Assembly (NCBI GenBank): GCA_950097015.1
Contig: CATNEN010000005.1
Coordinates: forward strand, 4,774,001 to 4,838,000
DNA: 64,000 nucleotides
Origin: Macrostomum hystrix
Lineage: Eukaryota; Animalia; Platyhelminthes
Reading direction: 5' to 3'
Shown: piece by piece, positions 1 through 16,400 of the stretch
How the letters are laid out: every line of letters begins with the position of its first letter
Numbering within the stretch: the stretch's first letter is position 1
Program-made: the position numbers and the translations under genes
The notes under the pieces: generated by a model
What the model was told of the DNA's origin: nothing
What the model saw: only the letters and a program-made list of their open reading frames with translations
Databases searched by the model: none

Positions 1-315
1 CAGAATTTGACATTATATGAAACACCATTTCTTTTCGTATCTTTTCCTAGCAAATTAGAATCAGACACGTTAGAAATGAATTTGGCCCCTTTTAAAAAGC
101 TGGTCTAACCCCAAGCTCAAACTTAGTGGCCGAAAACTTTTCCTCCTCGTCTCAACCAATTAGAATGTGGCACGAGGAACGATTCTACTTTTTCATTCCT
201 ATCAGCCAATCAGATTCTCGAAGGAGGAGCGAAAAATAAATATTTTCATTCCTTCACTCAGCCAATAAAACTATTACAGGGTGCCTGGAATTTTTACTTT
301 TTATTGATATCTCAC

Positions 316-3300
316 CCGAATCAAATCCATGACATCAGGCTGGTCAGCCATTATCGGAAATTGTACCAGGCACGGCCCATAGACTGGTGCGCAGTCTCGT
401 TCGACTATTATTTTGTCCTGTCCGAGTTCGCTAGCTAATAATTGCCTATAGATACTGTGCAATTGTAGATGCGCTAAGCTGCCAATCATGGTGCCTGGAC
501 AGGTGCTAAAATATTAAATAACGATCATCATAAACACTCTTCAAATTTCTACGAAATCTTTAGCGAGACTAGGAGTAATATACTTACTCCATGAACTCTT
601 TAACTTCACGACTTGGTAAAGTGAATTTTAGCTGCACTCTTGGCTGCTTGCTGCTTTGTCCACGGAATAGACCGCTTGATTGGCTGCCTAGGTAAATCAA
701 TAATTAAAGAATACTTACTTTTCATTTCCAGTTGAATAATGTCAATCAGCGAATCGATCATTCAGTCGGTCATAAAACATTTGGTCATTCAGTCGGTGAG
801 TCATAAACCAAACAAATCACGAGGAACGTGATTGGTCATTCAGCTAGGGATCATTTGGTCATTTTAATGCTGGATCAAGTCTGTGGGTTAAAACCTCTGG
901 TCATTTAGTTGGTGGGTCATAAACCTTGGTCAATTAGTTGGTGGGTCATAAACCTTGGTCATTTAGTTGATGGGTCATAAACCTTGGTCATTTAGTTGGT
1001 GGGTCATAAACCTTGGTCATTTAGTTGGTGGGTCATAAGCCTTGGTCATTTAGTTGGTGGGTCATAAACCTTGGTCATTTAGTTGGTGGGTCATAAACCT
1101 CTGGTCATTTAGTTGGTGGGTCATAAGCCTTGGTCATTTAGTTGGTGGGTCATAAACCTTGGTCATTTAGTTGGTGGGTCATAAACCTTGGTCATTTAGT
1201 TGGTGGGTCATAAACCTTGGTCATTTAGTTGGTGGGTCATAAACCTTGGTCATTTAGTTGGTGGGTCATAAACCTTGGTCATTTAGTTGGTGGGTCATAA
1301 ACCTTGGTCATTTAGTTGGTGGGTCATAAACCTTGGCCATTTAGTTGGTGGGTCATAAACCTTGGTCAATTAGTTGGTGGGTCATAAACCTCTGGTCATT
1401 TAGTTGGTGGGTCATAAACCTTGGTCATTTAGTTGGTGGGTCATAAACCTTGGTCATTTAGTTGGTGGGTCATAAGCCTGGGTCATTTAGTTGGTGGGTC
1501 ATAAACCTTGGTCATTTAGTTGGTGGGTCATAAACCTTGGTCATTTAGTTGGTGGGTCATAAACCTTGGTCATTTAGTTGGTGGGTCATAAACCTTGGCC
1601 ATTTAGTTGGTGGGTCATAAACCTTGGTCAATTAGTTGGTGGGTCATAAACCTCTGGTCATTTAGTTGGTGGGTCATAAACCTTGGTCATTTAGTTGGTG
1701 GGTCATAAACCTTGGTCATTTAGTTGGTGGGTCATAAGCCTTGGTCATTTAGTTGGTGGGTCATAAACCTTGGTCATTTAGTTGGTGGGTCATAAACCTC
1801 TGGTCATTTAGTTGGTGGGTCATAAGCCTTGGTCATTTAGTTGGTGGGTCATAAACCTTGGTCATTTAGTTGGTGGGTCATAAACCTTGGTCATTTAGTT
1901 GGTGGGTCATAAACCTTGGTCATTTAGTTGGTGGGTCATAAACCTTGGTCATTTAGTTGGTGGGTCATAAACCTTGGTCATTTAGTTGGTGGGTCATAAA
2001 CCTTGGTCATTTAGTTGGTGGGTCATAAACCTTGGCCATTTAGTTGGTGGGTCATAAACCTTGGTCAATTAGTTGGTGGGTCATAAACCTCTGGTCATTT
2101 AGTTGGTGGGTCATAAACCTTGGTCATTTAGTTGGTGGGTCATAAACCTTGGTCATTTAGTTGGTGGGTCATAAACCTTGGTTATTTAGTTGGTGGGTCA
2201 TAAACCTTGGTCATTTAGTTGATGGGTCATAAACCTTGGTCATTTAGTTGGTGGGTCATAAACCTTGGTCATTTAGTTGGTGGGTCATAAACCTTGGTCA
2301 TTTAGTTGGTGGGTCATAAACCTTGGTCATTTAGTTGGTGGGTCATAAACCTTGGTCATTTAGTTGGTGGGTCATAAACCTTGGCCATTTAGTTGGTGGG
2401 TCATAAACCTTGGTCAATTAGTTGGTGGGTCATAAACCTCTGGTCATTTAGTTGGTGGGTCATAAACCTTGGTCATTTAGTTGGTGGGTCATAAACCTTG
2501 GTCATTTAGTTGGTGGGTCATAAGCCTGGGTCATTTAGTTGGTGGGTCATAAACCTTGGTCATTTAGTTGGTGGGTCATAAACCTCTGGTCATTTAGTTG
2601 GTGGGTCATAAACCTTGGTCATTTAGTTGGTGGGTCATAAACCTTGGTCATTTAGTTGGTGGGTCATAAACCTTGGTCATTTAGTTGGTGGGTCATAAAC
2701 CTTGGTCATTTAGTTGGTGGGTCATAAACCTTGGTCATTTAGTTGATGGGTCATAAACCTTGGTCATTTAGTTGGTGGGTCATAAACCTTGGTCATTTAG
2801 TTGATGGGTCATAAACCTTGGTCATTTAGTTGGTGGGTCATAAACCTTGGTCATTTAGTTGGTGGGTCATAAACCTTGGTCATTTAGTTGGTGGGTCATA
2901 AGCCTTGGTCATTTAGTTGGTGGGTCATAAACCTTGGTCATTTAGTTGATGGGTCATAAACCTTGGTCATTTAGTTGGTGGGTCATAAACCTTGGTCATT
3001 TAGTTGGTGGGTCATAAACCTTGGTCATTTAGTTGGTGGGTCATAAACCTTGGTCATTTAGTTGGTGGGTCATAAACCTTGGTCATTTAGTTGGTGGGTC
3101 ATAAGCCTTGGTCATTTAGTTAGTGGGTCATAAACCTTGGTCATTTTTAAACTTTCTTGACTAATTAACATTTCGAAAAACCCCTACTTATTTTTTCACA
3201 TTTTTAGTTTATTTTTAATAAAAATATCTTTAGTTCAAACACACTTGGTGCCTTGCAAACCAAACTTGTACGTGTGTGCCTGTGTTTCGTGTTAGTTATG

Positions 3301-6300
3301 AAAATAGAATCAAAAGAAAAAAATGATTTAGGGACAAATATAAAAGTTATATCGGTACTATATACGATTCTAAATTACCACTTTGTAGACTCGTTTGACT
3401 GGCAGACTTATGGAGTTTAAATTAAACGAAGACAAGAAAAGGAAAATTAATTTCGAAACTTGCATACGTTATGTTTTATACAACAACATTATCAGTAAAG
3501 TTCCTAATAAGTTACGAAAACGTTTCTTTAACTTCTCTAGTTAATAAAACCCGCTTCAGTAAATACGTAATACATAATTTTGTATAACGTGTAAATAATA
3601 TGCTTAAATTCCATGTCTACATGTATAGCTTGTGAGAAGCTTGCTACGATTCCTGTGTTCCTTCTACGATTCCTGTGTTCCTGCTACGATTCCAATGTTT
3701 AAGCTACGATTCCAATGCTTAAGCTACGATTCCAATGTCCCTGCTTCGATTTTAACGTTCCTGATACGATTTCTATGTTTCTGCTACGATTTTAACGTTC
3801 CTGCTTCGATTCCAACGTTTAAGCTACGATTCCAATGTTCCTACTTCGATTCCAACGTTCCTGCTACGATTCATACGTTCCTGATACGATTATTATATTC
3901 CTGCTACGATTCATACGTTTTAGCTACAAATCCAGTGTTTCTACTCCGATTCTAACGTTCCTGCTACGATTCCTATGTTTCTGCTACGATTCCTATGTTC
4001 CTGCTACGATTCCTATGTTTCTGCTACGATTCCAATGTTCCTGCTACGATTCCAATGTTCCTGCTACGATTCCAGGGTTCTTGCTACTTTTTGTCTGCTA
4101 AAGTTGTCTCCTAAATTGTCACGCATTGATTTTATTTTGTTAGCTTAAAAAGTGATATGAAGAAAACAAAAATATTCACAATAAACTTCATAAAGGTAAA
4201 AAGTAAAGTTCCTTCAATAAAATAAAAGGGCTTGAATGACACCTTACCAGCCTTACTCAGACTCGGATCAACTTCAATCTGCTGCTCAAAGGGTGTTCCG
4301 CCTTCGAGCTGCAGGTCCAACGACCTGAATGGATAAACGATTTGGTACATTCGTTATCTTTCTTATCTCTAGTTATTCAATTGATTTTCTACGAGTCACG
4401 AAGCACCAAGTTTTGTGATTGGCGAATCGGCCTTCCTTGATTGGCTAGAGAGGGATTTGGTTGTTGCTATTTTTAGATGAACCGCCTTCTCTTCAGTATC
4501 ATCGCGTGACCAGCGTCAGCCAATCAAATTTTAGCAAGCTCCACCACATTTAAGTCCTACGTCAGTCTTGTTCAAATTTAGCATTCCAAGAAACTAACCC
4601 AATTAAGACTTTTAAAAATGTTAACCGTAGAATCCATGTAAGCACAAAGCATAGAAGCGAAACACAGAGCAAAGCATTGCTTGAAAAAATTTAACGCTCT
4701 CACGAAAAAGATTATTTTTTACACGTTTTTTTCTGCACTTTAATGTGCACTGTGCATCGAATTGATTTCCATTTTTAAACTTTGGACTGTAGCTTGCGTA
4801 GTTATCGTTGCAAATAATTGCGACATTTCCACTCTAATTAGATTAGAAGCTACATATAATTTTCAAAGAGGCAAGGCAAATATAGTAGCAGGGTACCTGT
4901 TTCTCACAGGCGAAGAGCAAATATTTCTGCAATGTTTCATTACAGCTGTGTATTTCAATATGCAATCAATCTGCAATACCAGCCCATCAAAACCTGCATC
5001 ACCAGCCCTTCTAACCCTGCATCACCAGCCCTACAAACCCTGCATCACCAGCCCTACAAACCCTGCATCACCAGCCCTAAAAACCCTGCATCACTAGCCC
5101 TACAAATCCTGCATCACTAGCCCTACAAACCCTACAAACCCCGCATCACTATAAATAAACTTAAATAAAAAATCGGATACTTACTTCGCCGGCGTTGGGC
5201 CACCGTGTTCGTCGAATAGGGGAACAGTCACGTGACCAATACTTAGCTCGAAGACTCCAGTCGGCTGCAATTAATAAGTGTTTTCTATTAAGTTTGAGCC
5301 AATTCTTCATTATTCATGTTAAAATAACTCTTACTCAAATCTCAAATACTCAAATGTGATTCCCTTAATCTTCATCATCCCCGCTTCCAACTTTCCTATC
5401 TTCCTATCATCCGCTCTTCCCCTCTTCCGTATTCCCATCTTCCCCATTTGTCAATTTTTCCCTCTTCTTATCCTCCCATCTTCCCATCTTCCTCTCTTCC
5501 AATCCTTCTTGTCTTCTAATCTTCAGATCTTCTCCTCTCTCCCATCTTCCCCTCTTCCCCTATTAAGCCATGTTCCCATCTTCCGATTCTCTCGTGATCC
5601 CCCTCTTCCCATTTTCCCATGTTTCCGCCTTCCCATTAAACAAACTTTGCCTCTGCCATGAAGCACCCGGCGCAGTGGCAAACCTCATTTCCCTCGGCAG
5701 TCGCATCCTCAGGGCAGACAATGGTAGCCTCTAGCAGCAGTCGGACATGATTCGGAGCATAGTTATATCGAACATAGACCTCGCCGAATTCCAGACAGGG
5801 CGTCGATTCGCCAAGCCTATTGGTGAAAGTCCAGACTCGTTCATCGTTTCGATTAGCCAAGACGGCTCTGACTGTGAGCACGTTTGACACCGGACCACGA
5901 CCGTCGAAGAGGCACAGCCGAACGAATCGATCCAACACCTTCACCGCTGCGGTGGTGATTTTGGGGGAAAAAGAGTTCTCTACCTGCCATATCTACCCGA
6001 GTATCCAAATCTCAAATTCGAGTTATTTCTTCATGGCAACAGAAAAAATAGTAACTCACGCAGATCTGCCGGCATCAGAGTGCACTTTTGCAGCTGAAGA
6101 ACCTTATCAACTCGCGACGAAAACGGCTTCATCTGAGAATAATTTGTAATTCGCTAATTTAGTAAGCTTTTCTGACGTGTGGTACTGTAATATACGATCG
6201 TATTTAATGCACTACTTGTAAGTAAAGTAACAGTACTCGTAAAAAACAACTTTAAATATTGTTAACCGAAAGTTAAAAATTAGAAAATCGTAAAAATCTT

Positions 6301-9300
6301 CAGGAACGGAATTATTTATGAGGAAAAATCAGACTTGTCAGTTAATTAATAGTTATTATATTATTTGTCATAGATATTAAAAACTTATAGTGAGTACATA
6401 CTTTTACGGTTTGTTAATTGACATTAACATTTCCGTTTAAAATGCATTGTTATATTCAAATTGTTATAGTCACACTAACATCAGTCCTTAATTATAATAC
6501 AAGTTGTAAAATGTAAAATATATTAAATTTTACAATGCAACCTCAAGCTGTTACTTTGTAAGTTGTAATTATAAAAAAACATTAAAAAAAACTAAAATGA
6601 GAAGCAAATCGAAAGTTTATTAAAGTTTATTTTCGCTTCTTAAAAAATAGTTTTTCTAATATATCCGATTGTTGTTATTCGCAGGAACAAAGCATTTTGA
6701 AAATGCAATGCACTACTAAAAAAAGTAGTAGCGTTTGTTTTAGCGGGTTTGGCTCTGTTATCTATAATTTACAAGAATCCGTCATTTAAAACAATAGATC
6801 TATTTCATTGGATGTTATTATAGAGGTTAATTTGTTTTTTAGTAAGAATGTTCTATTTTTATGTGCCTTTATTAATAGGACAGATGTTGCAGAACAAAAA
6901 TAAAATTACAATAAAATAATGATACAAGGAAGCGAAACCAGTTGAAACAAAATTAGAAAATAATCCTAACTACTAGATCAATAGAAAAATGACCACAACA
7001 GGAGCTATGCGCAGAAAAAGCTAAGATTTTGTTCTCGACTTTACTGAAAGAAGCAAGAAATTCCAGAACTTCGGACCCCTCAAACGGTGATCGCGTTTCT
7101 ATAATATTTATTCTGGCGTTAGAATACCTGCGATGCTCTGCCAGGCAAGCTATCAAGGATTGCAGCGCAGGAAGGTGACAACTTTGGCTGCAGAAACGCA
7201 TGCAAGCTGAACTGACTGCCCGGATACTGTCCAGTGCCTGTTATTTAGCGTTATTCGGATATAAAAAATCCGTATATATCAGAATGAGAATTTTCTATAG
7301 CGTAGATTAACAAAACCTAAAATGGATTGTAACAAATTATATTTGAATTAAATTATAAATATATATGAATATATATATATATATATATATTACATATATG
7401 AATTTAAATTATGTAACAAATTCTATTATAAAATATATTCAAAAGTACTGAATTAGGACAACCGCAGTTTCTAATTGGCTAATTTTTAACGGGTTGATTT
7501 GTTGCTATTTTTAGAAATATATTTTCCTAAGCTCTTAAAATCACGTGACTCGCACTAACCAATGAAAATCGAACTGTTCATTTTAAGTAGTAGACAGTTT
7601 CTGAGCAATGTTAAAATTAGGCTTTATTACGGTTTTGCAAAGCACAAGAAACAATAGGTTCATTCTAATTTAAACAAACAACACAAGAGCACGCACACTA
7701 AAAAATAGCGACTGCAAATCTCCGCAGCGATTTACAAAGCAGAACACTCCATTAACAGCAAGCTTAGGATACTTAAGCACACTGAAAAGCATAAAAATGT
7801 TAACGCTTCATATAGGCTATTCTGAAAGCAGCCTGAAAGCATAGCTTATATAGGCTATTCTGAAAGCAATCGTTCTACAATTCTATTTTTTTATTTCGAA
7901 CGCGAACATGCAAATGTGCTATTAGTCTACTTAAAGTAAGTAGTCTTAACAAAATAGGCACAAAATTAATTATATTATATTACACCGTTGATTTATTCCT
8001 TGAATTGCACTGTCTCTTGGTTTTTTATTGTTACGCTTTTCATATTGTGAATAATAGGTTGTACGTGAATCAACCATGTAAAATTTTATTTGACTTCGTG
8101 CAATTACATTTATTTTTGCTACATTGATTTGTGCAGTGATTTGTGAATTGGGTTTCAAGTATTAGGATTTTCGTTTTTTGTTAACAAAAAACTCAAAGGG
8201 AACTCAGATCGATAATACCTGCTGGTTAATCGGGTCTAGCAACAGATCCCGGTAACCGAGGCAACTGCGAGACAATTTCGGCGTGAGTTGGGCCGAAAGA
8301 TTGTGGTAACCTAGGCAACGAGGACGCAGATTGTTTTTTTTCAGTTAAGAGAGATAAAAGCTTGTCATTCGTTTCTAATTTTAGCAATAAAACCAATAGA
8401 AAGTACAATTTTACCTTCGTAAAACCATTTGGCCAAAGTGCTGTTCCTGAAGCCGGCTGGCAATCCAGGTGTTAGCTGACTCGTGGAGCTGATCAGCTTC
8501 TGGAATTTGTTTCAATCGCCTGATAATTAAATGTATTATAATGGCATTTTTCTGTTTAAATGCTAAATCGTGCAAATAGTTTTCTGTTCTACAAATCATG
8601 TCATAAAAATCATACCAATTTGTCAGTTTTTTGACTGAAGACAACGAGTAGAGGGTGATTGACTAAGTAGAGATGATGGAGAGATGATGGAGAAATGATG
8701 GAGAGATGATGGAGAAATGATGAAGAAATGATGGAGAAATGATGGAGAGATGATGGAGAAATGATGGAGAGATGATGGAGAAATGATGGAGAAATGATGG
8801 AGAAATGATGAAGAAATGATGGAGAAATGATGGAGACATGATGGAGAGATGATGGAGAAATGATGGAGAGATGATAGAGAGATGATGGAGAAATGATGGA
8901 GAAATGATGAAGAAATGATGGAGAAATGATGGAGACATGATGGAGACATGATGGAGAGATGATGGAGAGATGATGGAGAGATGATGGAGAAATGATGGAG
9001 AGATGATGGAGAGATGATGGAGAGATGATGGAGAAATGATGGAGAGATGATGGAGAAATGATGGAGAGATGATGGAGAAATGATGGAGAGATGATGGAGA
9101 AATGATGGAGAGATGATGGAGAAATGATGGAGAGATGATAGAGAAATGATGGAGAGATGATGGGGAGATGATGGAGAGATGATGGAGTGATGATGGGGAG
9201 ATGATGGAGAGATGATGGAGTGATGATGGAGGGATGATGGAGAAATGATGGGGGAGATGATAGAGAAATGAGGGAGATTAGGTAGAAATGATTTAGAGGA

Positions 9301-10046
9301 TTCTGGAGATGAGGTAACAGGATGGAGATCTCTCTCCTCAAAGTGAATAATTAGATTTTCATTCCCAAGCGCGATTGCATTTCTTATAAAATAATTCGAT
9401 GCAAAAACGTTTCAGGTGATAAAAGTCAAGCAATGCTGTCCAATTAAAAAACTAAATAACAAAAGTTCTGAAAACTGATCGTCAATCTTAAATTAAGCAT
9501 AGCTAGTGATTTGTCGCAAAGCAAACATGCACTTTGGCTAATAAAAACCTATTTATATACCTCGTGACTCATAAAAAGGCTATTTTGATCGCCGGTACTG
9601 ATGCCTATGTCATTAGTGTCTGATAATAAACTGCTGTCGTCATCTGAGTCTGTGTCATCCATCCAGGATTCACGCTATAAGTACGGATTTATTTATTTCG
9701 TTTTATTAATTTGCTGATAGTTTGGCAAACAAACTGACAGACAGAAAGACAGGCGGACAGACAGACAGATAGACAGAGAGACAGACAGAGAGACAGACAG
9801 ACAGGCGGACAGACAGACAGGCAATACAGACAGGCAGACAGACAGACAGACAGGCAATACAGACAGACAGACAAACAGACAGACAGGCGGACAGACAGAC
9901 AAACAGACAGACAACCAGACAGGCAATACAGACAGACAGACAGACAGGCAATACAGACAGACAGACAGACAGGCAATACAGACAGACAGACAGACAGGCA
10001 ATACAGACAGACAGACAGACAGGCAATACAGACAGACAGACAGGCG

Positions 10047-10088
<42 letters not shown>

Positions 10089-13075
10089 GAGTCAGACAGA
10101 CAGACAGGCAATACAGACAGGCAGACAGACAGACAGACAGGCAGACAGACAGACAGACAGACAGGCGGACAGACAGACAGTCAGACAGACAGACAGACTA
10201 AGCAACTAACCTCATCCTGCTGAATGACTGACTGCGGAGCAGTAGGCAGTTCATCATGCAGCTCGTCTTCTTCCTCTTCGTCATCCTCTCCATATTCGTA
10301 CTCATCTTGGTCGTCGAAGTCGTCGTCTCCTGACTCGGACTCTTCCACAGCCTTCAGCAGGGTGCTGGGCACCAAGGCCTCCTGACCCCGGCTATTCCTG
10401 GCCAGCCACCAGCCGTCCGCCCTATCAGATGAAAATTTCGAGCAAAACGAAACAAGTCAAAATTAATCAATAAAGAAGGAATCAGAGGAGGAATATTAGT
10501 TAGAATCGTAGCTAGGTTTAAAACTAAAAGCGCAAAAGAAACCACAGAATCCTAGCGAGAGCCTTGCTAAAATTGCAGGAGGAATCGTAGCTAGGATCGC
10601 AGGAATCGTAGCTAGAATCACAGGAATCGCAGCTAGAATCACAGGAATCGCAGCTAGAATCACAGGAATCGTAGCTAGGATCACAGGAGGAATCGTAGCT
10701 AGGAACGCAGGAGGAATCGTAGCTAGGAACGCAGGAGGAATCGTAGCTAGGATCGCAGGAGGAATCGTAGCTAGGATCGCAGGAGGAATCGTAGCTAGGA
10801 TCGCAGGAGGAATCGTAGCTAGGAATTGCAGGAGGAATCGTAGCTAGAATCACAGGAATCGTAGCTAGGATCACAGGAGGAATCGTAGCTAGGAACGCAG
10901 GAGGAATCGTAGCTAGGATCGCAGGAGGAATCGTAGATAGGAATTGCAGGAGTAATCGTAGCTAGGATCACAGGAGGAATCGTAGCTAGGAATTGCAGGA
11001 GGAATCGTAGCTAGGATGGCAAGAGGAATCGTAGCTAGGATCGCAAGAGGAATCGTAGCTAGAATCACAGGAATCGTAGCTAGGATCACAGGAGGAATCT
11101 TAGCTAGGATCGCAGGAGGAATCGTAGCTAGGATGGCAAGAGGAATCGTAGCTAGAATCACAGGAATCGTAGCTAGGATCACAGGAGGAATCTTAGCTCG
11201 GATCGCAGGAGGAATCGTAGCTAGGATGGCAAGAGGAATCGTAGCGAGGATCGCAGGAGGAATCACAGCTAGAATCGCAGGAGGAATCGTAGCGAGGATC
11301 GCAGGAGGAATCGCAGCTAGAATCGCAAAAGGAATCGTAGCTAGGATCGCAGGAGGAATCGTAGCGAGGATCGCAGGAGGAATCGCAGCTAGAATCGCAG
11401 GAGGAATCGAAGCTAGGATCGCAGGAGAAATCGTAGGAAGAATCGCAGGAGGAATCGTAGCTAGGATCGCAGGAGGAATCGTAGCTAGAATCACAAGAGG
11501 AATCGTAGCTAGAATCACAGCAGGAGTCGAATAAAATTTGCAGGACAATGAAGTGAGAAGTTTATATTTGGTCTTTTCGGATCAAAAAGCAAAAACGATT
11601 ATCGCACCCGATTCGCAGAACAACCAGATGCTCGCCAGGAGCTACCCTGAGAATGTCGGGCTCCTGTCCATCGTAGGCTTGCAGCACCACGTACAGATTC
11701 GGCTCGTCCGAGGCCAAGGATCGCATATCGTCTTCCTCTTCGGCGCTGTCTTCTGCTTCTATTTTCTTGGCTTCGAGCTTGTCCGCCGTTGGCTGCCTCG
11801 GTGCTGGGGTCGGGCTGTTCGTTTGATGAGCCGCGGCAGCTGCTGCAACCGGTGCCTGTTCCTCTTCTTCTTCTTCTTCCTCATATTCTTCTTCATCATC
11901 TTCTTCCTCCTCCTCTTCGTCGAATTCTTCCGAGTCTTGATCAAGCTGAGTCTTTATCTCGACCTTAGCTTCTGGTTTGGCAGCTGGCGCTGCTTCTGCT
12001 GGTGCTGGTGTTGGTGCTGGCGCTTGGGCAGCTGCTTCTGCTGGTGCTGGTGCTGCTGGTGCTGCTGGCGCTGGTGCTACTGGTGCAGTAGTTGCTGATG
12101 GCGCTGCTTCCGTAGTTTCCTTTACCGCTTCGGCAGTCGTTTCAGTGGCTGTTTCTCCGACTGTTCCGCCGGCTGATTCTGTTGCGGGTGTTTCTGTCTT
12201 CGCCTCCTCAGCTTCGGGTTCGGGTGGCACGGGGATATTGTGCTTCTCCATCAATTTGCTGGACTTAGTCTGTAATTCGTTTTTTTAACTAGTCACTTTT
12301 TTCGAAAAAAAGAGCTAAACCTTTTTTAAAACAAGGAAAGCAATTGTAATTTGTAACTTACAAGCTCTTCTTGAAGTGATTTTACAAGGCCAGACTTTTT
12401 CTTGTCTAGGAAGAAAACTTTCTTTGCTGGCTGAAATCCAAATTAAAAATTTTTATATTCTAAAGGTAATTAAGCAAAGGATATTTTTTATTTTTATAAA
12501 GGTCTTAAAAGTTAAATTTTCACCTGAAATTCCATCACTTCCTTGATGAATACTTTCTGCTGAGCTCTAAGTTCAGTATATCTAGACGAAGAAGACAACG
12601 TGATAAGGTAACTGTTAGGTAAGCAAAAGCAAAAAATATAAGAAGAATCTAATCTTACTTATTTTGGTTGCTTGCGACCTCCGTACTTGTTCCAGGAATC
12701 GCAGACGAGAATGCTTTCACCTTTTTGGTTAGAAAAAGAAATATTTATAACTTCTAAAAAACTATTCATGAAAGTATGAAGCGAATACAAAACATGTATT
12801 AATCCACAAACAACAAGAAGCAAAGAAACGATTACTCAAAGTGACGTTTCCTTCTTTGCTTCTCTGAAAAAATGATCTTCTGACAGCACATTTTTTACTT
12901 GGCAGAGAGAGTTAAGGTACAACTAGAGAAAAAGGACATGTTTGGTGTAAACCTGTAACATATATATTCGTAATTTGCTGTATTTGCTTGGTTTGACACT
13001 TCAGAGTCCAACAAAAATCATTACCTCTTTTAGAAAATTGTCAATCTTTTTCTTTAATTCGTCGTAGTCAGCCAT
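316..13075 (-). CDS. NPHP1: Nephrocystin-1 (ciliary transition-zone protein), multi-exon, 3' end incomplete at the window start
   Basis: Exons with GT-AG ends and continuous frame: 13025-13075, 12659-12720, 12524-12581, 12362-12430, 11608-12269, 10211-10421, 9561-9674, 8415-8475, [8219-8310 or 7128-7237], 6060-6132, 5684-5946, 5185-5264, 4248-4324, 588-687, 316-505. The product has an N-terminal coiled coil, an acidic tract, an SH3 domain ([34 protein letters not shown]), then [49 protein letters not shown] and [15 protein letters not shown]. These match recalled human NPHP1 motifs ([46 protein letters not shown]). Confidence 0.93.
897..3146. repeat. 29-bp minisatellite (ggtcatttagttggtgggtcataaacctt)n in an NPHP1 intron
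   Basis: About 2.2 kb of near-identical tandem units with recurring variants and no unique spacers. Confidence 0.97.
3636..4090. repeat. ~20-bp degenerate minisatellite (ctgctacgattcctatgttc), NPHP1 intron
   Basis: Tandem ctacgattcc-core units. They generate the spurious ORFs 3632..3955 and 3835..4101. Confidence 0.9.
4975..5150. repeat. 22-23-bp minisatellite (cctgcatcaccagccctacaaac), NPHP1 intron
   Basis: Short tandem array seen directly. Confidence 0.85.
8670..9325. repeat. 11-bp minisatellite (gatggagaaat/gatggagagat)n, NPHP1 intron
   Basis: Tandem units; source of the spurious His/Ser/Ile ORFs. Confidence 0.95.
9720..10200. repeat. (AGAC)n compound microsatellite, NPHP1 intron
   Basis: Tandem agac with interspersed aggcaatac variants. 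Confidence 0.95.
10500..11530. repeat. 21/24-bp minisatellite (ggaatcgtagctaggatcgcagga) in the intron that splits the NPHP1 SH3 domain
   Basis: Tandem units between exons 11608-12269 and 10211-10421. Confidence 0.93.
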
Positions 13076-13167
13076 TTTAGAGTTTCGAGTTTCGAGGGTC
13101 AAAAAATTAATATTACACCTAAGTCCGACGACGTACAAATATTACGACGTACAAAGGACTGTTGTAC

Positions 13168-13182
13168 GTCGCCATCGGAGAC
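13168..13182. promoter_or_regulatory. Candidate RFX X-box (GTCGCC atc GGAGAC) in the NPHP1/Tectonic intergenic region
   Basis: Fits the RYYRYY-N1-3-RRNRAC X-box consensus and lies between two divergent ciliary genes. Function is inferred. Confidence 0.55.
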
Positions 13183-13459
13183 AAAAAATGTAACAATAGT
13201 TTAAGTTAAAAGCTGAGAATACTTAAAATTATATAAATATATTGCAATCGTATTTACTATCTGTGCAATTCTCGCTTGTATTTAAAACAAGAAAACATAA
13301 TATATTACTAGCATTGTAGCTTTAATGTTTTGTAAGAAAGCTTTGTTTTAATAAGTATCTAAGCAAACGTTTGTATTCAAATTGTAACATTTTTTCATAT
13401 TTTTGATTTTTTACAAGCTGATTCCCTGCAAATGTCCAGACATCAAGCGTCACGATAGC

Positions 13460-16400
13460 ATGTACGTTAACGTATGCACATCCCATGCCGCCATTTTGGC
13501 TGTAGTGGCAACTATTATAACATTTTCTGGCACAGCAGCACAAAGTAAGTGTACTACACAGAACATTCCGATTGAATCCGTACATACAATTACAAATGTT
13601 ATACATCTTACATTGCCGCACATTAAAAGAATATTTTCCTATTATTTCCATAGGAAAATGCTTTTATTTTTTATAAAATTGCATATTTTTATTGTTTACA
13701 ATTTAAGAAACATTCGACAAAACAATAAATAGGCCTAGGTCTGTCGATTTTCTATTTTTTTATGTATGTTAAAATTATCACGTCATTTATATATCTGAAA
13801 AATTATAGGAACTGGTAAATTATTTAGCTTAGATTTTTTAACCATCTAGATACTTCTTATCAGGTAAATGTATATTAGGAGGAGAGAGAATTCAAATTCA
13901 GTGGTACTTAATTATAACGTATGAAAGTGTACAGACAATTTTTGCAAACGAAATTGTCATTTAATTCACCATTTAGCTCAAAATAACTTTTAAATAAAAC
14001 TTTAACTTTGATTAACAGACAATCCAGGTCCGTGTACTTGCGATTTGACACAATCAGTCTGCGATATTTCCTGCTGCTGTGATTCCGACTGTACTAGCGA
14101 GGATATTCTTGCATTTGACACCTGTCTAAATGCTTATAGCTTGTAAGATTTTTAAGTATATTAAAATATGCCCTATATATTTTTTTTGTGCATGTAAAAC
14201 ACATAATTTGAGCAAAGAAAAATGGAAAATTTAAACAAATAATTTTTTCAGTGCAAGTGTCCAGTCGTGTTTTCCAACAGCGATTATGTTTCGCAATTAC
14301 ACACCCTACACAATCAACACCAGTAGTGGCAATGGACTGTCCTGCATCTACTATGACAGTTGTGGGTATAAGTACAGATTTTTAAGTACACACTAAACTA
14401 TTTAAATTTGATAATGATACAAAAACTTTACTTTTAATTGCAGTCGCGTCAAGGAACTACTTCACCAATCCACAAGTTGAGAATGGAAACATTACAAAGT
14501 TGTCACTGAAGGCACAGGCGTTTGCTAGCTACAATTTTTCTGCTATAAACCCTGCCATAGACTATTCGTCATACGGCAGTATTTATAAGGTTAATAATTA
14601 TAATTATTAATTATTACAATTATTACAACCAAGGGAGGTTGTAGCCTATAGTGTTTAGGGCGTCGGACTCACGACTTGAAGGTCGGGGGTTCGATTCCCG
14701 TCTCCACTGGAACAATTTGTGTCCTTTAGCAAGACACTTAACTCTGCATTGCTTCAGTTCACCCAGCTGTTAAATGGGTACCAGCATCAGCTGGGGTAAT
14801 TGAAGGCGGGTGTGGCGTCCCCCCAGTCAATGGACTGAACAGCCGTACGCAGCCTTCAGATGCGCCGCGCATTAGCTGCGGCTGTGCTGTCGGCTGCACA
14901 TCTGACCCTATTGGGGCAGGTGTAATCAATTATTATTATTTTTATTAATTAATTATAATATTTACTGGAGGGCTGTGGAGGGCTGGCACATTAAACCCGA
15001 AGCCAACGAGGAGGCAATCCTGCGTACTGCGCACTTTCTCATCGTTAGGCATCTCTCACTAGGTATCTCTCACCTGTGCTTTGGACCGCTCCGCCACTCA
15101 CCCCCTGTATTTTTAAGAATATTTAAGTTACTATGAACTATACTCGTACATTTGATCGGATAATGTCCCACAGGCCGGCAATCCGATCATCACAATCTAC
15201 AACAGCAGTGGAAATCCGAGCTACCTAAGGCAACCTTCAGCAGTTGGCGGCAGTCAGTTCTGCGGCTACGCTTCGCCAGCCCTGTTCCTAGTCGGCGGTG
15301 CGACAGCTTGCGTTCGCACAGTCAGCTCCAGTAGCTGCACAAATGATTCTGTTCTGGACCTATTGATGCACACAACCGATTTCAGAGTATTACCCCAGCC
15401 CAGCCTACTCACTAGCAATGTTACCGTCGGGGTGAATTACACTGCTCTGACACCTGTGACTCAGGGTTCTGTCACCTGCCTGCAGTTGGATGGCACAGCT
15501 ATTAATTGCTCCGAATTTTCGCCGTCCTTAACTGGCAGCGAGTGCAACAATGTACTGCGATCGGTGAGGTTAAAGCCTCTAATCTTAGTGGATCTTAGGT
15601 GGATCTGAGAGTGGGCCTCCACAGTCCACAGACTGAACAGGTGTGCGCAGCACTTTAAAAACGCCACGCAATCCATAGCAACAGATCTCTATCAATGGAT
15701 CCCTAGCTACAGATGCATAGCAAAAAGATCCCTAGCAACAGATCTCTAGCAAAAGATCCCTAGCAACAGATCCCTAGCAACAGATCTCTATCAATGGATC
15801 CCTAGCAATAGATCTCTATCAATGGATCCCTAGCAACAGATCTCTAGCAAAAGATCCCTAGAAACAGATCCCTAGCAACAGATCTCTATCAATGGATCCC
15901 TAGCAACTGATCTCAAGAAAAAAACCCTAGCAACAGATCCCTAGCAATAGATCTCTAGCAACAAATCCCTAGCAACAGATCCCTAGCAAAATAATCAAAG
16001 CAACAGATCCGTAGATGTAGATCCCTAGCAACAGATCCCTAGGAACATATCCCTAGCAACAGATCCCTGGAAACATATCCGGATGTACCTCCAGGTTTCG
16101 TAATTTGTTTTTTTGAATCTGTTAAAAAAATCGCACAAAACATTTTTTTACTAGGACTTTATTTAAACCAATCAATTTAGCTAACTTACAACATCAAGTA
16201 CTTGCCTACGAGTGGAATCTACGAGGTGACTTACAATGCCGTCTTAGCTGCCTACAATGTTAGCAGTGCCTACTCGTTGAAACAGACTTTCACTCTGAAT
16301 TTCAACTTGGTATGTTCAATTGAGTTTTCGTTGCATTATATTGATTCCTAACCCGATCCCTAGAAATAGATACCTATTAAAATATCCCTAGCAACAGATC

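What the first reader, a model, noticed from the sequence alone, without database searches (positions are those of the whole stretch)
7128..8310. Two homologous, frame-incompatible exons in NPHP1: candidate mutually exclusive splicing
Seen: between exon 8415-8475 (ends phase 1) and exon 6060-6132 (starts phase 0) lie two separate GT-AG exons that each start in phase 1 and end in phase 0. Exon A (8219-8310) reads [30 protein letters not shown]. Exon B (7128-7237) reads [36 protein letters not shown]. Either alone keeps the frame; both together shift it. Known: both resemble the same single stretch of human NPHP1 ([22 protein letters not shown]), A better in its second half (LGYRDLL) and B in its first half ([12 protein letters not shown]). 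Inference: an old exon duplication retained as an either/or cassette, giving two NPHP1 isoforms at the start of the conserved C-terminal region. I know of no such cassette in NPHP1, but cannot check the literature.
Basis: partly seen in the sequence, partly recalled or inferred. Interest (0 to 1): 0.72.

Follow-up and report, generated by a model that had tools for sequence, protein, structure and literature searches.

The report
Duplicated alternative exons in flatworm NPHP1
A Macrostomum-like flatworm's copy of the cilia gene NPHP1 holds two old versions of one small exon. RNA shows each spliced in alone, giving two protein versions, but also both together, which breaks the reading frame.

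Summary
One correction: the upstream exon starts at 8499, not 8475.

A and B are homologous to each other (1 of 5000 shuffles reaches the score). Both match the same NPHP1 segment: a profile built from 15 other animals hits only A (E 6e-7) and B (E 5.6e-7) in this stretch.

Spliced RNA contigs from four runs of one study show these junctions:
- up>A, A>C and A>B in all four runs
- B>C in all four (drawn 4 nt off in X1)
- up>B in two runs

So A-only and B-only mRNAs exist. Double inclusion is also common and puts a TGA at codon 2 of the next exon.

B is an old coding exon. A B-type exon sits in Macrostomum lignano NPHP1, with 49% amino-acid identity, conserved only in the coding frame. No A-type exon was found there. 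A snail and a chiton have a single A-like exon of 95 and 92 nt.

Verdict: a real, old duplicated alternative exon pair whose exclusivity rests on the reading frame, not on splicing. It is a new member of a known kind. The scan had noted other such pairs in this genome, but not this one.

The parts
8415..8499 (-). Upstream constitutive exon ('up', 85 nt). It reads [28 protein letters not shown] plus one carried base and ends in phase 1.
   Evidence: Contigs cover 8413-8501 and join both A and B. The loose end matches the exon ending ...CAGGATGAG near 10213. It is 54% identical to M. lignano L001:9930-10013.
8219..8310 (-). Exon A (92 nt, phase 1 to 0), the canonical version: (G)[30 protein letters not shown].
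   Evidence: Joints up>A and A>C are in all four runs. It is the best match for the annelid, snail, chiton and planarian segments, with E from 3e-6 to 2e-3. The profile gives E 6e-7. Its length and phases match the chiton exon, 92 nt.
7238..8218 (-). Intron between A and B (981 nt, GT..AG). It is removed in the double-inclusion form.
   Evidence: Joint 7236/8218 (cut +1) is in all four runs. Contig records 10 and 16 run A(31 nt)-B-C(26 nt).
7128..7237 (-). Exon B (110 nt, phase 1 to 0), the divergent version: (G)[36 protein letters not shown]. Its acceptor is pyrimidine-poor (0.45, against 0.70 for A).
   Evidence: Joint up>B is in runs X1 and X4. Joint B>C is in X2-X4, and in X1 it is drawn at 7132. 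The profile gives E 5.6e-7. It is 49-54% identical to M. lignano L001:10553-10659. BLOSUM score is 84 in the coding frame against 18-20 in the other two frames, with pN 0.35 and pS 0.77.
6060..6132 (-). Downstream constitutive exon C (73 nt, starts in phase 0): [24 protein letters not shown].
   Evidence: It is joined from A and from B, and on to exon D, in all four runs.
6129..6131 (-). TGA that becomes in-frame when A and B are both included. It is the second codon read in exon C.
   Evidence: Local translation of up+A+B+C read from window.fa gives ...[39 protein letters not shown].
5684..5946 (-). Exon D (263 nt), the start of the conserved beta-sandwich of the NPHP1 C-terminal domain ([13 protein letters not shown]...).
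   Evidence: Joint 6060>5946 is in all four runs, and 5684 joins to 5264. Its best match is P0001 of M. lignano (E 1.3e-22), followed by NPHP1 orthologues.

Best explanation
This is an old tandem duplication of one small NPHP1 exon, kept as a pair of alternative exons.

The exon encodes an ordered 30-36 residue segment, (F/Y)LxPKLSxSxxx(Y/F)(R/K)DL, that lies just before the first strand of the C2-like beta-sandwich of the C-terminal domain.
- Splicing up>A>C gives the canonical protein.
- Splicing up>B>C gives a second in-frame protein. It has six more residues and a rewritten second half: the YRDL motif is replaced by ILDS.

Nothing at the splicing level forces a choice, so A and B are often both included. 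Both lengths are 2 mod 3, so double inclusion shifts the frame and puts a TGA at the second codon of exon C. That RNA can yield only a truncated protein lacking the C-terminal domain, and is probably a target of nonsense-mediated decay.

Exclusivity is therefore enforced at the level of the reading frame, as in FGFR2 IIIb/IIIc. I found no sign of competing RNA structures, steric hindrance or U2/U12 incompatibility.

Shown: the exons, their homology, all five junctions, the frame consequences, and conservation of B in its coding frame.
Inferred: that the B-only mRNA is translated and functional, that the A+B RNA is degraded, and that the choice is regulated between samples.
For: - Splice sites, phases and peptides are as read.
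- A is homologous to B (1 of 5000 shuffles). Each matches the same NPHP1 segment. A profile built without either exon hits only A and B in 3 kb.
- RNA contigs from four runs give up>A, A>C and A>B in all four and up>B in X1 and X4. B>C is in X2-X4, and in X1 it is drawn 4 nt off. All contigs are 99% or more identical to the window.
- B-type is conserved in M. lignano only in the frame used by the B-only form: score 84 against 18-20, pN 0.35 against pS 0.77. That is the same level as the constitutive exons (up 54%, C 43%, D 57% identity). The flanking introns do not align.
- The same discrete exon with phases 1 to 0 exists once each in the snail Bulinus (95 nt) and the chiton Liolophura (92 nt).
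- In an AlphaFold2 model of the Owenia orthologue the segment is ordered, with pLDDT 85-94, directly before strand 66-76.
- All donors are U2-type GT and the A-B intron is 981 nt. No convincing inverted repeats were found.
Against: - The up>B joint is seen in only 2 of 4 runs. The junction contigs have 26-30 letters on the short side, under the tool's 31-letter rule. That is what k=31 contigs give at a branch, but it is still local evidence.
- All runs are from one study, as contigs and not reads. Their kind is not on record and is inferred to be RNA from the splicing.
- Double inclusion is at least as prominent as B-only. In X2 and X3, B is seen only together with A.
- There is no protein-level evidence for the B isoform.
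- In the M. lignano locus no A-type exon was found. As assembled, up+B-like+C-like is out of frame there by one base. That locus therefore does not itself prove a working B-only protein.
Confidence: 0.65

Rival explanations
1. B works mainly as a 'poison' cassette exon. Its inclusion next to A makes an unproductive, stop-containing RNA and so tunes the NPHP1 level. The B-only RNA is a minor by-product of occasional A skipping.
For: - The A>B joint is in all four runs. In X2 and X3 a single contig runs A-B-C and no up>B joint is seen.
- A+B gives a TGA at codon 2 of exon C, far upstream of later junctions.
- B has a weak acceptor, typical of regulated cassettes.
Against: - In A+B transcripts B is read in frame 0. 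Yet B is conserved with M. lignano only in frame 2, the frame of the B-only form (84 against 18-20).
- B still matches the NPHP1 family profile as well as A does.
- Poison exons are usually conserved at the nucleotide level together with their flanks, and here the flanks do not align.
- M. lignano keeps the B-type exon without any A.
Confidence: 0.2
2. The double-inclusion RNA is itself the functional product. It would give a truncated NPHP1 (coiled coil, SH3, acidic regions, A, then a 37-residue novel tail) that lacks the C-terminal domain.
For: A+B contigs are present in every run. B is open in frame 0, with 36 codons and no stop.
Against: - The frame-0 peptide of B is not conserved with M. 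lignano (score 20).
- An open 36-codon frame is expected by chance about one time in five.
- No evidence of translation exists.
Confidence: 0.07
3. B is a decaying duplicate, and its use in RNA is splicing noise with no function.
For: - The second half of B has lost the YRDL motif that is conserved from molluscs to mammals.
- The RNA libraries also hold unspliced intron contigs, so they contain immature RNA.
Against: - B-type has been kept open and similar across a divergence at which synonymous sites are saturated.
- It is the only version in the M. lignano locus.
- Its first half is closer to vertebrate NPHP1 than A's is.
Confidence: 0.05

Closest known systems
FGFR2 exons IIIb/IIIc: mutually exclusive exons whose double inclusion shifts the frame and is cleared by nonsense-mediated decay (Jones et al. 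2001, listed in the references of PMC6071210; details from my own knowledge)
   Same: Two adjacent homologous exons encode alternative versions of one structural segment. Neither length is a multiple of three and both leave the same remainder, so only single inclusion keeps the frame. Double inclusion gives a premature stop.
   Different: In FGFR2 the choice is also tightly controlled by tissue-specific splicing factors, and double inclusion is rare. Here double inclusion is seen in every run. Decay of the A+B RNA has not been tested. The lengths differ by 18 nt.
Mutually exclusive exons that arose by tandem exon duplication (Kondrashov and Koonin 2001; Pillmann et al. 2011; Hatje et al. 2017; as cited in PMC6071210)
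   Same: The exons are neighbours in one gene with the same phases, similar length and detectable peptide homology, and each substitutes for the other in frame.
   Different: I found no docking or selector RNA structures. The pair is not retained as a pair in the one relative examined.
Poison (stop-introducing) cassette exons of unproductive splicing (review PMC11062102)
   Same: Including B in an A-containing transcript introduces a premature stop.
   Different: B is a homologous coding exon conserved in a protein frame, not a nucleotide-conserved non-coding cassette. It can also replace A in frame.
Other duplicated alternative exon pairs that this scan noted in the same genome (unc-13, KCNQ, SERCA, PKD2, PKD, FOXRED1, nAChR; unchecked AI notes)
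   Same: Same genome and same kind of event. Several are reported there as shared with other flatworms or spiralians.
   Different: They are in different genes. The NPHP1 pair is absent from the snail and chiton loci I read.

Membership tests
Mutually exclusive exon pair of tandem-duplication origin | The two exons are adjacent in the same gene, on the same strand, between shared constitutive exons | tested here: met
   A is 8310..8219 and B is 7237..7128, lying between up (8499..8415) and C (6132..6060)..
Mutually exclusive exon pair of tandem-duplication origin | Same splice phases and similar length | tested here: met
   Both run from phase 1 to phase 0. Lengths are 92 and 110 nt, a difference of 18 nt or six codons..
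Mutually exclusive exon pair of tandem-duplication origin | Sequence homology between the two exons | tested here: met
   Peptide score 43, reached by 1 of 5000 shuffles. Both are hit by a profile of the orthologous segment at E about 6e-7. No DNA-level similarity remains.
Mutually exclusive exon pair of tandem-duplication origin | Mature transcripts carry exactly one of the two | tested here: inconclusive
   Single-inclusion junctions exist for both exons: up>A and A>C in four runs, up>B in two, B>C in four. A>B double inclusion is also in all four runs, and the libraries hold unspliced RNA too. No long reads or cytoplasmic fraction were available.
Frame-enforced (decay-coupled) exclusivity, FGFR2 type | Double inclusion and double skipping both break the frame | tested here: met
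   The combined 202 nt is 1 mod 3 and gives a TGA at 6131..6129. Skipping both gives stops within 12 codons. No up>C joint was seen.
Frame-enforced (decay-coupled) exclusivity, FGFR2 type | The out-of-frame form is degraded by nonsense-mediated decay | not testable with these tools
   This needs UPF1/SMG knock-down or a translation block in the animal.
NPHP1 / nephrocystin-1 | Conserved C-terminal nephrocystin homology domain | tested here: met
   Exon D hits P0001 (M. lignano) at E 1.3e-22, and then named nephrocystin-1 of chiton, snail, annelid, planarian and vertebrates. P0001 hits vertebrate nephrocystin-1 at E 1e-45. Pfam has no model for this domain.
NPHP1 / nephrocystin-1 | N-terminal coiled coil, with an SH3 domain flanked by acidic stretches | tested here: inconclusive
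   Exon 12254..11562 holds acidic runs and the first half of an SH3 domain. The SH3_9 match has E 0.13, below the cut-off, because the domain is split between exons. I sent no joined model to any search.
Poison cassette exon | High nucleotide conservation of the exon and its flanks, with no conserved protein frame | tested here: not met
   Only the protein frame is conserved (84 against 18-20). The flanks do not align beyond chance, apart from one weak 29-nt block with 33 of 500 shuffles.

The most novel reading that the evidence does not exclude
The two exons give NPHP1 two different 'straps' on its C2-like domain. The animal would switch between them by cell type or stage to build different kinds of ciliary transition zone, with the A+B form acting as an off state. 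M. lignano, which keeps only the B-type exon at the locus read, would then show that the YRDL motif, conserved from molluscs to mammals, is dispensable for some NPHP1 function.
Probability: 0.25. Interest if true: 0.6.

Novelty: new member of a known kind. Interest (0 to 1): 0.42.

Why it matters
NPHP1 is the gene most often lost in juvenile nephronophthisis. It encodes a core part of the ciliary transition zone, and the role of its C-terminal domain is poorly understood.

A natural pair of interchangeable versions of the ordered segment that leads into that domain gives a ready-made structure-function contrast in an animal that can be manipulated. One version is canonical (YRDL kept). The other is rewritten but conserved.

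The case is also clean in that exclusivity rests on the reading frame alone and double inclusion is frequent. I found no report of such a pair in NPHP1, though the library searched is limited to open-access papers. For splicing biology the kind itself is well known.

Tried and rejected
- **Alternative GC donor at 7132 (run X1).** Rejected as a drawing artefact. The contig has the same length (138) as the X4 contig that ends at 7128, and A and B share their last four bases (gcag), which is exactly where a k=31 contig must break. I could not read the contig itself.
- **Competing RNA structures.** Inverted repeats in 6000-8520 are short, AT-rich and not placed as docking and selector pairs.
- **U2/U12 incompatibility or steric hindrance.** All donors are GT of U2 type and the A-B intron is 981 nt.
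- **A third copy.** None in 1-14000 of the window.
- **An A-type exon in M. lignano L001.** tblastn, a motif scan and a profile search between the up and C-like exons found only the B-type exon.
- **Other Macrostomum NPHP1 proteins.**
  - The word search with P0001 found none in its length range.
  - A profile search headed by a nematode protein returned only nematodes, so that search was wasted.
- **Is the window M. lignano itself?** No. Its 455-residue ORF has no exact record, and its best M. lignano matches are 52-58% identical.
- **Pfam on single exons.** No family for the C-terminal domain.
- **Loose ends at 6640 and 8540.** They match nothing in the window, so they are probably repeats transcribed elsewhere.
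- **Owenia isoforms.** They do not differ in this segment.

Full report
**What is in the sequence.** The gene runs on the minus strand.
- Exon A is 8310..8219 (92 nt) and exon B is 7237..7128 (110 nt).
- Each is preceded by AG and followed by GTAT.
- Both lengths are 2 mod 3. Either exon alone leads in frame into exon C (6132..6060, [17 protein letters not shown]...) and exon D (5946..5684, [13 protein letters not shown]...).
- Both together read B in another frame and meet a TGA at the second codon of exon C (6131..6129). Neither exon gives stops within 12 codons.
- The one correction concerns the upstream exon. RNA shows it is 8499..8415 and not 8475..8415, with the same frame and end phase.

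**How the joined readings were handled.** I computed the joined readings only locally, from window.fa, to check frames. Searches were made exon by exon, by reference.

**Is the resemblance more than chance?**
- A against B scores 43 by Smith-Waterman. Shuffles average 17.7 (sd 3.9), and 1 of 5000 reaches 43. No DNA similarity is left.
- I took the homologous segment from 15 NPHP1 proteins returned by the searches, from chiton, snail, annelid, hemichordate, planarian, octopus and non-human vertebrates. A scores a mean of 46.6 and B 40.7, against about 17 (sd 1.8) for shuffles.
- A is the better match in the second half ([10 protein letters not shown] against (S/A)(Y/F)(R/K)DLxxD). B is the better match in the first half ([11 protein letters not shown] against [11 protein letters not shown]).
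- A profile built from those 15 segments, without A or B, was run over all open pieces of 5600-8620. It hits only B (E 5.6e-7) and A (E 6e-7), and the next piece has E above 3.
- There is no third copy.

**The gene.**
- Exon D finds a Macrostomum lignano protein (P0001, BOX15_Mlig013883g4) at E 1.3e-22. It then finds proteins named nephrocystin-1 in the chiton Liolophura, the snail Bulinus, Octopus and a rhinoceros, and NPHP1 in the planarian Schmidtea. An unnamed protein of the annelid Owenia is also found.
- P0001 hits vertebrate nephrocystin-1 at E 1e-45.
- Pfam has no model of the C-terminal domain.
- Earlier notes of this scan call the genome a Macrostomum flatworm. My own test agrees on kinship but not on species: a 455-residue ORF of the window has M. 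lignano as its best relative at only 52-58% identity.
- The window therefore comes from a distant Macrostomum-like relative, and the M. lignano locus (L001) is an orthologue or co-orthologue.
- Human NPHP1 protein entries came back. They were swept into a batch 5-mer count and otherwise left out.

**RNA.** The only runs found are four runs of one study and one organism. They hold the locus as contigs 99% or more identical to the window, spliced at GT-AG borders, so they are RNA even though their kind is not on record. The joints seen are:
- up>A (8415>8310) in all four runs
- A>C (8219>6132, B skipped) in all four
- A>B (8219>7237, both included) in all four
- up>B (8415>7237, A skipped) in X1 and X4 only
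- B>C (7128>6132) in X2, X3 and X4, and in X1 drawn at 7132
- C>D in all four

I read the X1 case as the same 138-nt contig as in X4, because A and B share their last four bases.

The shape of the contigs carries its own information.
- In X2 and X3 one 166-nt contig runs from the last 31 nt of A through all of B into 26 nt of C. There is no branch at the start of B in those runs.
- In X1 and X4 the B contig starts at the exon border, and separate up>B and A>B junction contigs exist.

No up>C joint was reported. Several junction contigs have only 26-30 letters on the short side, below the tool's 31-letter rule. That is what contigs built with 31-letter words give at a branch, and the matches fall exactly on the splice sites in independent runs. 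They are still local evidence. Only the A-B-C order is seen within one contig.

The depths of the junction contigs are of the same order: up>A 13-22, A>C 5-10, A>B 3-11, up>B 5-7. The tool warns against ranking by depth, so I conclude only that double inclusion is not rare. Contigs of unspliced intron are also present, so the libraries hold immature RNA.

**Age and selection.** In M. lignano (L001):
- The up exon is at ..10014, 54% identical to the window's.
- A B-type exon is at 10553-10659: 107 nt, GT-AG, phase 1 to 0, reading TRRYPGKQFSLQSLLHPKLTASCMSVQDGWGCTPQ.
- A C-like exon starts at 12267 and a D-like exon at 12419.

B and the M. lignano exon are 49% identical over 35 codons. pN is 0.35 and pS is 0.77, which is saturated. 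This is the same level as the constitutive exons.

The similarity exists only in the proposed coding frame, with a score of 84 against 20 and 18 in the other two frames. The flanking introns do not align beyond chance. The frame under selection is the one used only when B follows the up exon directly. That is my main argument that the B-only mRNA is translated.

A cannot be a recent copy of B, because it keeps ancestral residues (YRDLxxDP) that both B-type exons lack. The duplication is therefore older than the split of the two flatworms.

In the snail Bulinus (L002:10594-10688, 95 nt) and the chiton Liolophura (L003:12754-12845, 92 nt) the same segment is a discrete exon with phases 1 to 0, present once. 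No second copy lies in the flanking introns. The ancestral exon is thus old, and the duplication is not shared with those molluscs.

**What does not fit.**
- No A-type exon was found in L001 between the up and C-like exons by tblastn, motif scan or profile.
- The C-like exon of L001 starts in phase 1, whereas the window's starts in phase 0. As assembled, up+B-like+C-like is out of frame by one base.
- That explains why the annotated protein P0001 starts at MVLRR in a wrong frame of the up exon and reads the B-like exon in a wrong frame.
- I cannot tell whether this is an assembly error, a defective copy (the name g4 suggests several loci) or something else. It weakens L001 as proof of a working B-only protein. 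It does not weaken it as evidence of long-term coding constraint.

**Where the segment sits.** I made an AlphaFold2 model of the C-terminal part of the Owenia orthologue (P0023:305-710, 28 sequences, mean pLDDT 87).
- The homologous segment falls at model residues about 29-58. It forms a short helix and extended stretches with pLDDT 85-94.
- It lies directly before the first strand (66-76) of a beta-sandwich, which is followed by a helical array.
- Foldseek matches the sandwich to the C2 domains of DOCK180 and PI3-kinase at E 5e-6 and above.
- The alternative exons therefore swap an ordered lead-in segment of the domain, not a loose linker. I did not see its contacts, and the window's own isoforms were not folded because that would need a joined model.

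**Mechanism.**
- Donors are U2-type GT, the A-B intron is 981 nt, and inverted repeats are short and AT-rich. I see no basis for exclusivity at the splicing step.
- The acceptor of B is pyrimidine-poor (0.45, against 0.70 for A), which fits regulated, partial use.
- The frame rule does the sorting. Only single inclusion gives full-length protein.
- This is the arrangement known from FGFR2 IIIb/IIIc, where nonsense-mediated decay removes the double form. That paper is listed in the references of PMC6071210, and the details are from my own knowledge. Decay has not been tested here.

**Rivals.**
- B could be chiefly a poison cassette (0.2). This fits the frequent A+B form, but not conservation that is confined to the B-only frame.
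- The truncated A+B product could be the point (0.07).
- B could be noise (0.05).

**Novelty.** Full-text searches found no alternative exon pair of this kind in NPHP1. They found only a cassette exon regulated by ESRP2 in human cells and general lists. No paper mentions NPHP1 together with Macrostomum. The scan has noted similar exon pairs in other genes of this genome, but not this one. I file it as a new member of a known kind.

Noticed in passing
window 9561-9674 (minus strand): A further alternative exon of NPHP1. It is 114 nt, in frame and GT-AG, and reads [39 protein letters not shown] contig of run X2 joins it to the up exon. A contig of run X3 joins the preceding acidic exon (ending near 10213) directly to the up exon. 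It is therefore a cassette exon, both included and skipped.
   Followed up: partly
L001 9900-12440 (M. lignano NIVC01000042.1): The annotated protein BOX15_Mlig013883g4 covers only the C-terminal part of NPHP1. It starts in a wrong frame of the up exon and reads the B-like exon in a wrong frame. As assembled, up+B-like+C-like is off by one base, because the C-like exon starts in phase 1. The N-terminal exons (start codon at 4939, a long K/D/E-rich exon at 5890-7368) carry no gene call.
   Followed up: partly
window 8669-9277, 9736-10198, 10575-11529: Three long tandem arrays inside NPHP1 introns: an 11-nt unit x55, (GACA)n x114 and a 24-nt unit x40. They create long spurious ORFs on both strands.
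   Followed up: no
model of P0023:305-710 (Owenia NPHP1): The conserved C-terminal domain of NPHP1 folds with high confidence as a C2-like beta-sandwich followed by a helical array. The best solved matches are the C2 domains of DOCK180 and PI3-kinase. Pfam has no family for it.
   Followed up: partly
window 7315-7343 and L001 10461-10490: A 29-nt block (AATATAATTTGTTACAATCCATTTTAGG-like) lies 60-105 nt upstream of the B acceptor in both species, in introns that otherwise do not align. The support is weak (33 of 500 shuffles reach the score). It could be a branch-site region or a regulatory element.
   Followed up: no
window 6106-6272, 6919-7138, 8036-8247: The RNA runs hold contigs that run from exons into introns unspliced. 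They therefore contain pre-mRNA or intron-retaining RNA, which inflates immature and unproductive forms.
   Followed up: no
window 6635-6843: Contigs in the B-C intron continue into sequence that is absent from the window (loose end at 6640). This is probably a repeat transcribed from elsewhere.
   Followed up: partly
window 13073-13075 and L001 4638-4939: The NPHP1 start ([18 protein letters not shown] in the window; MVDFSDLKKRVETFVKEV in M. lignano) lies head to head with a Tectonic gene in both species, about 300 bp apart in M. lignano. The divergent pairing is therefore conserved.
   Followed up: partly
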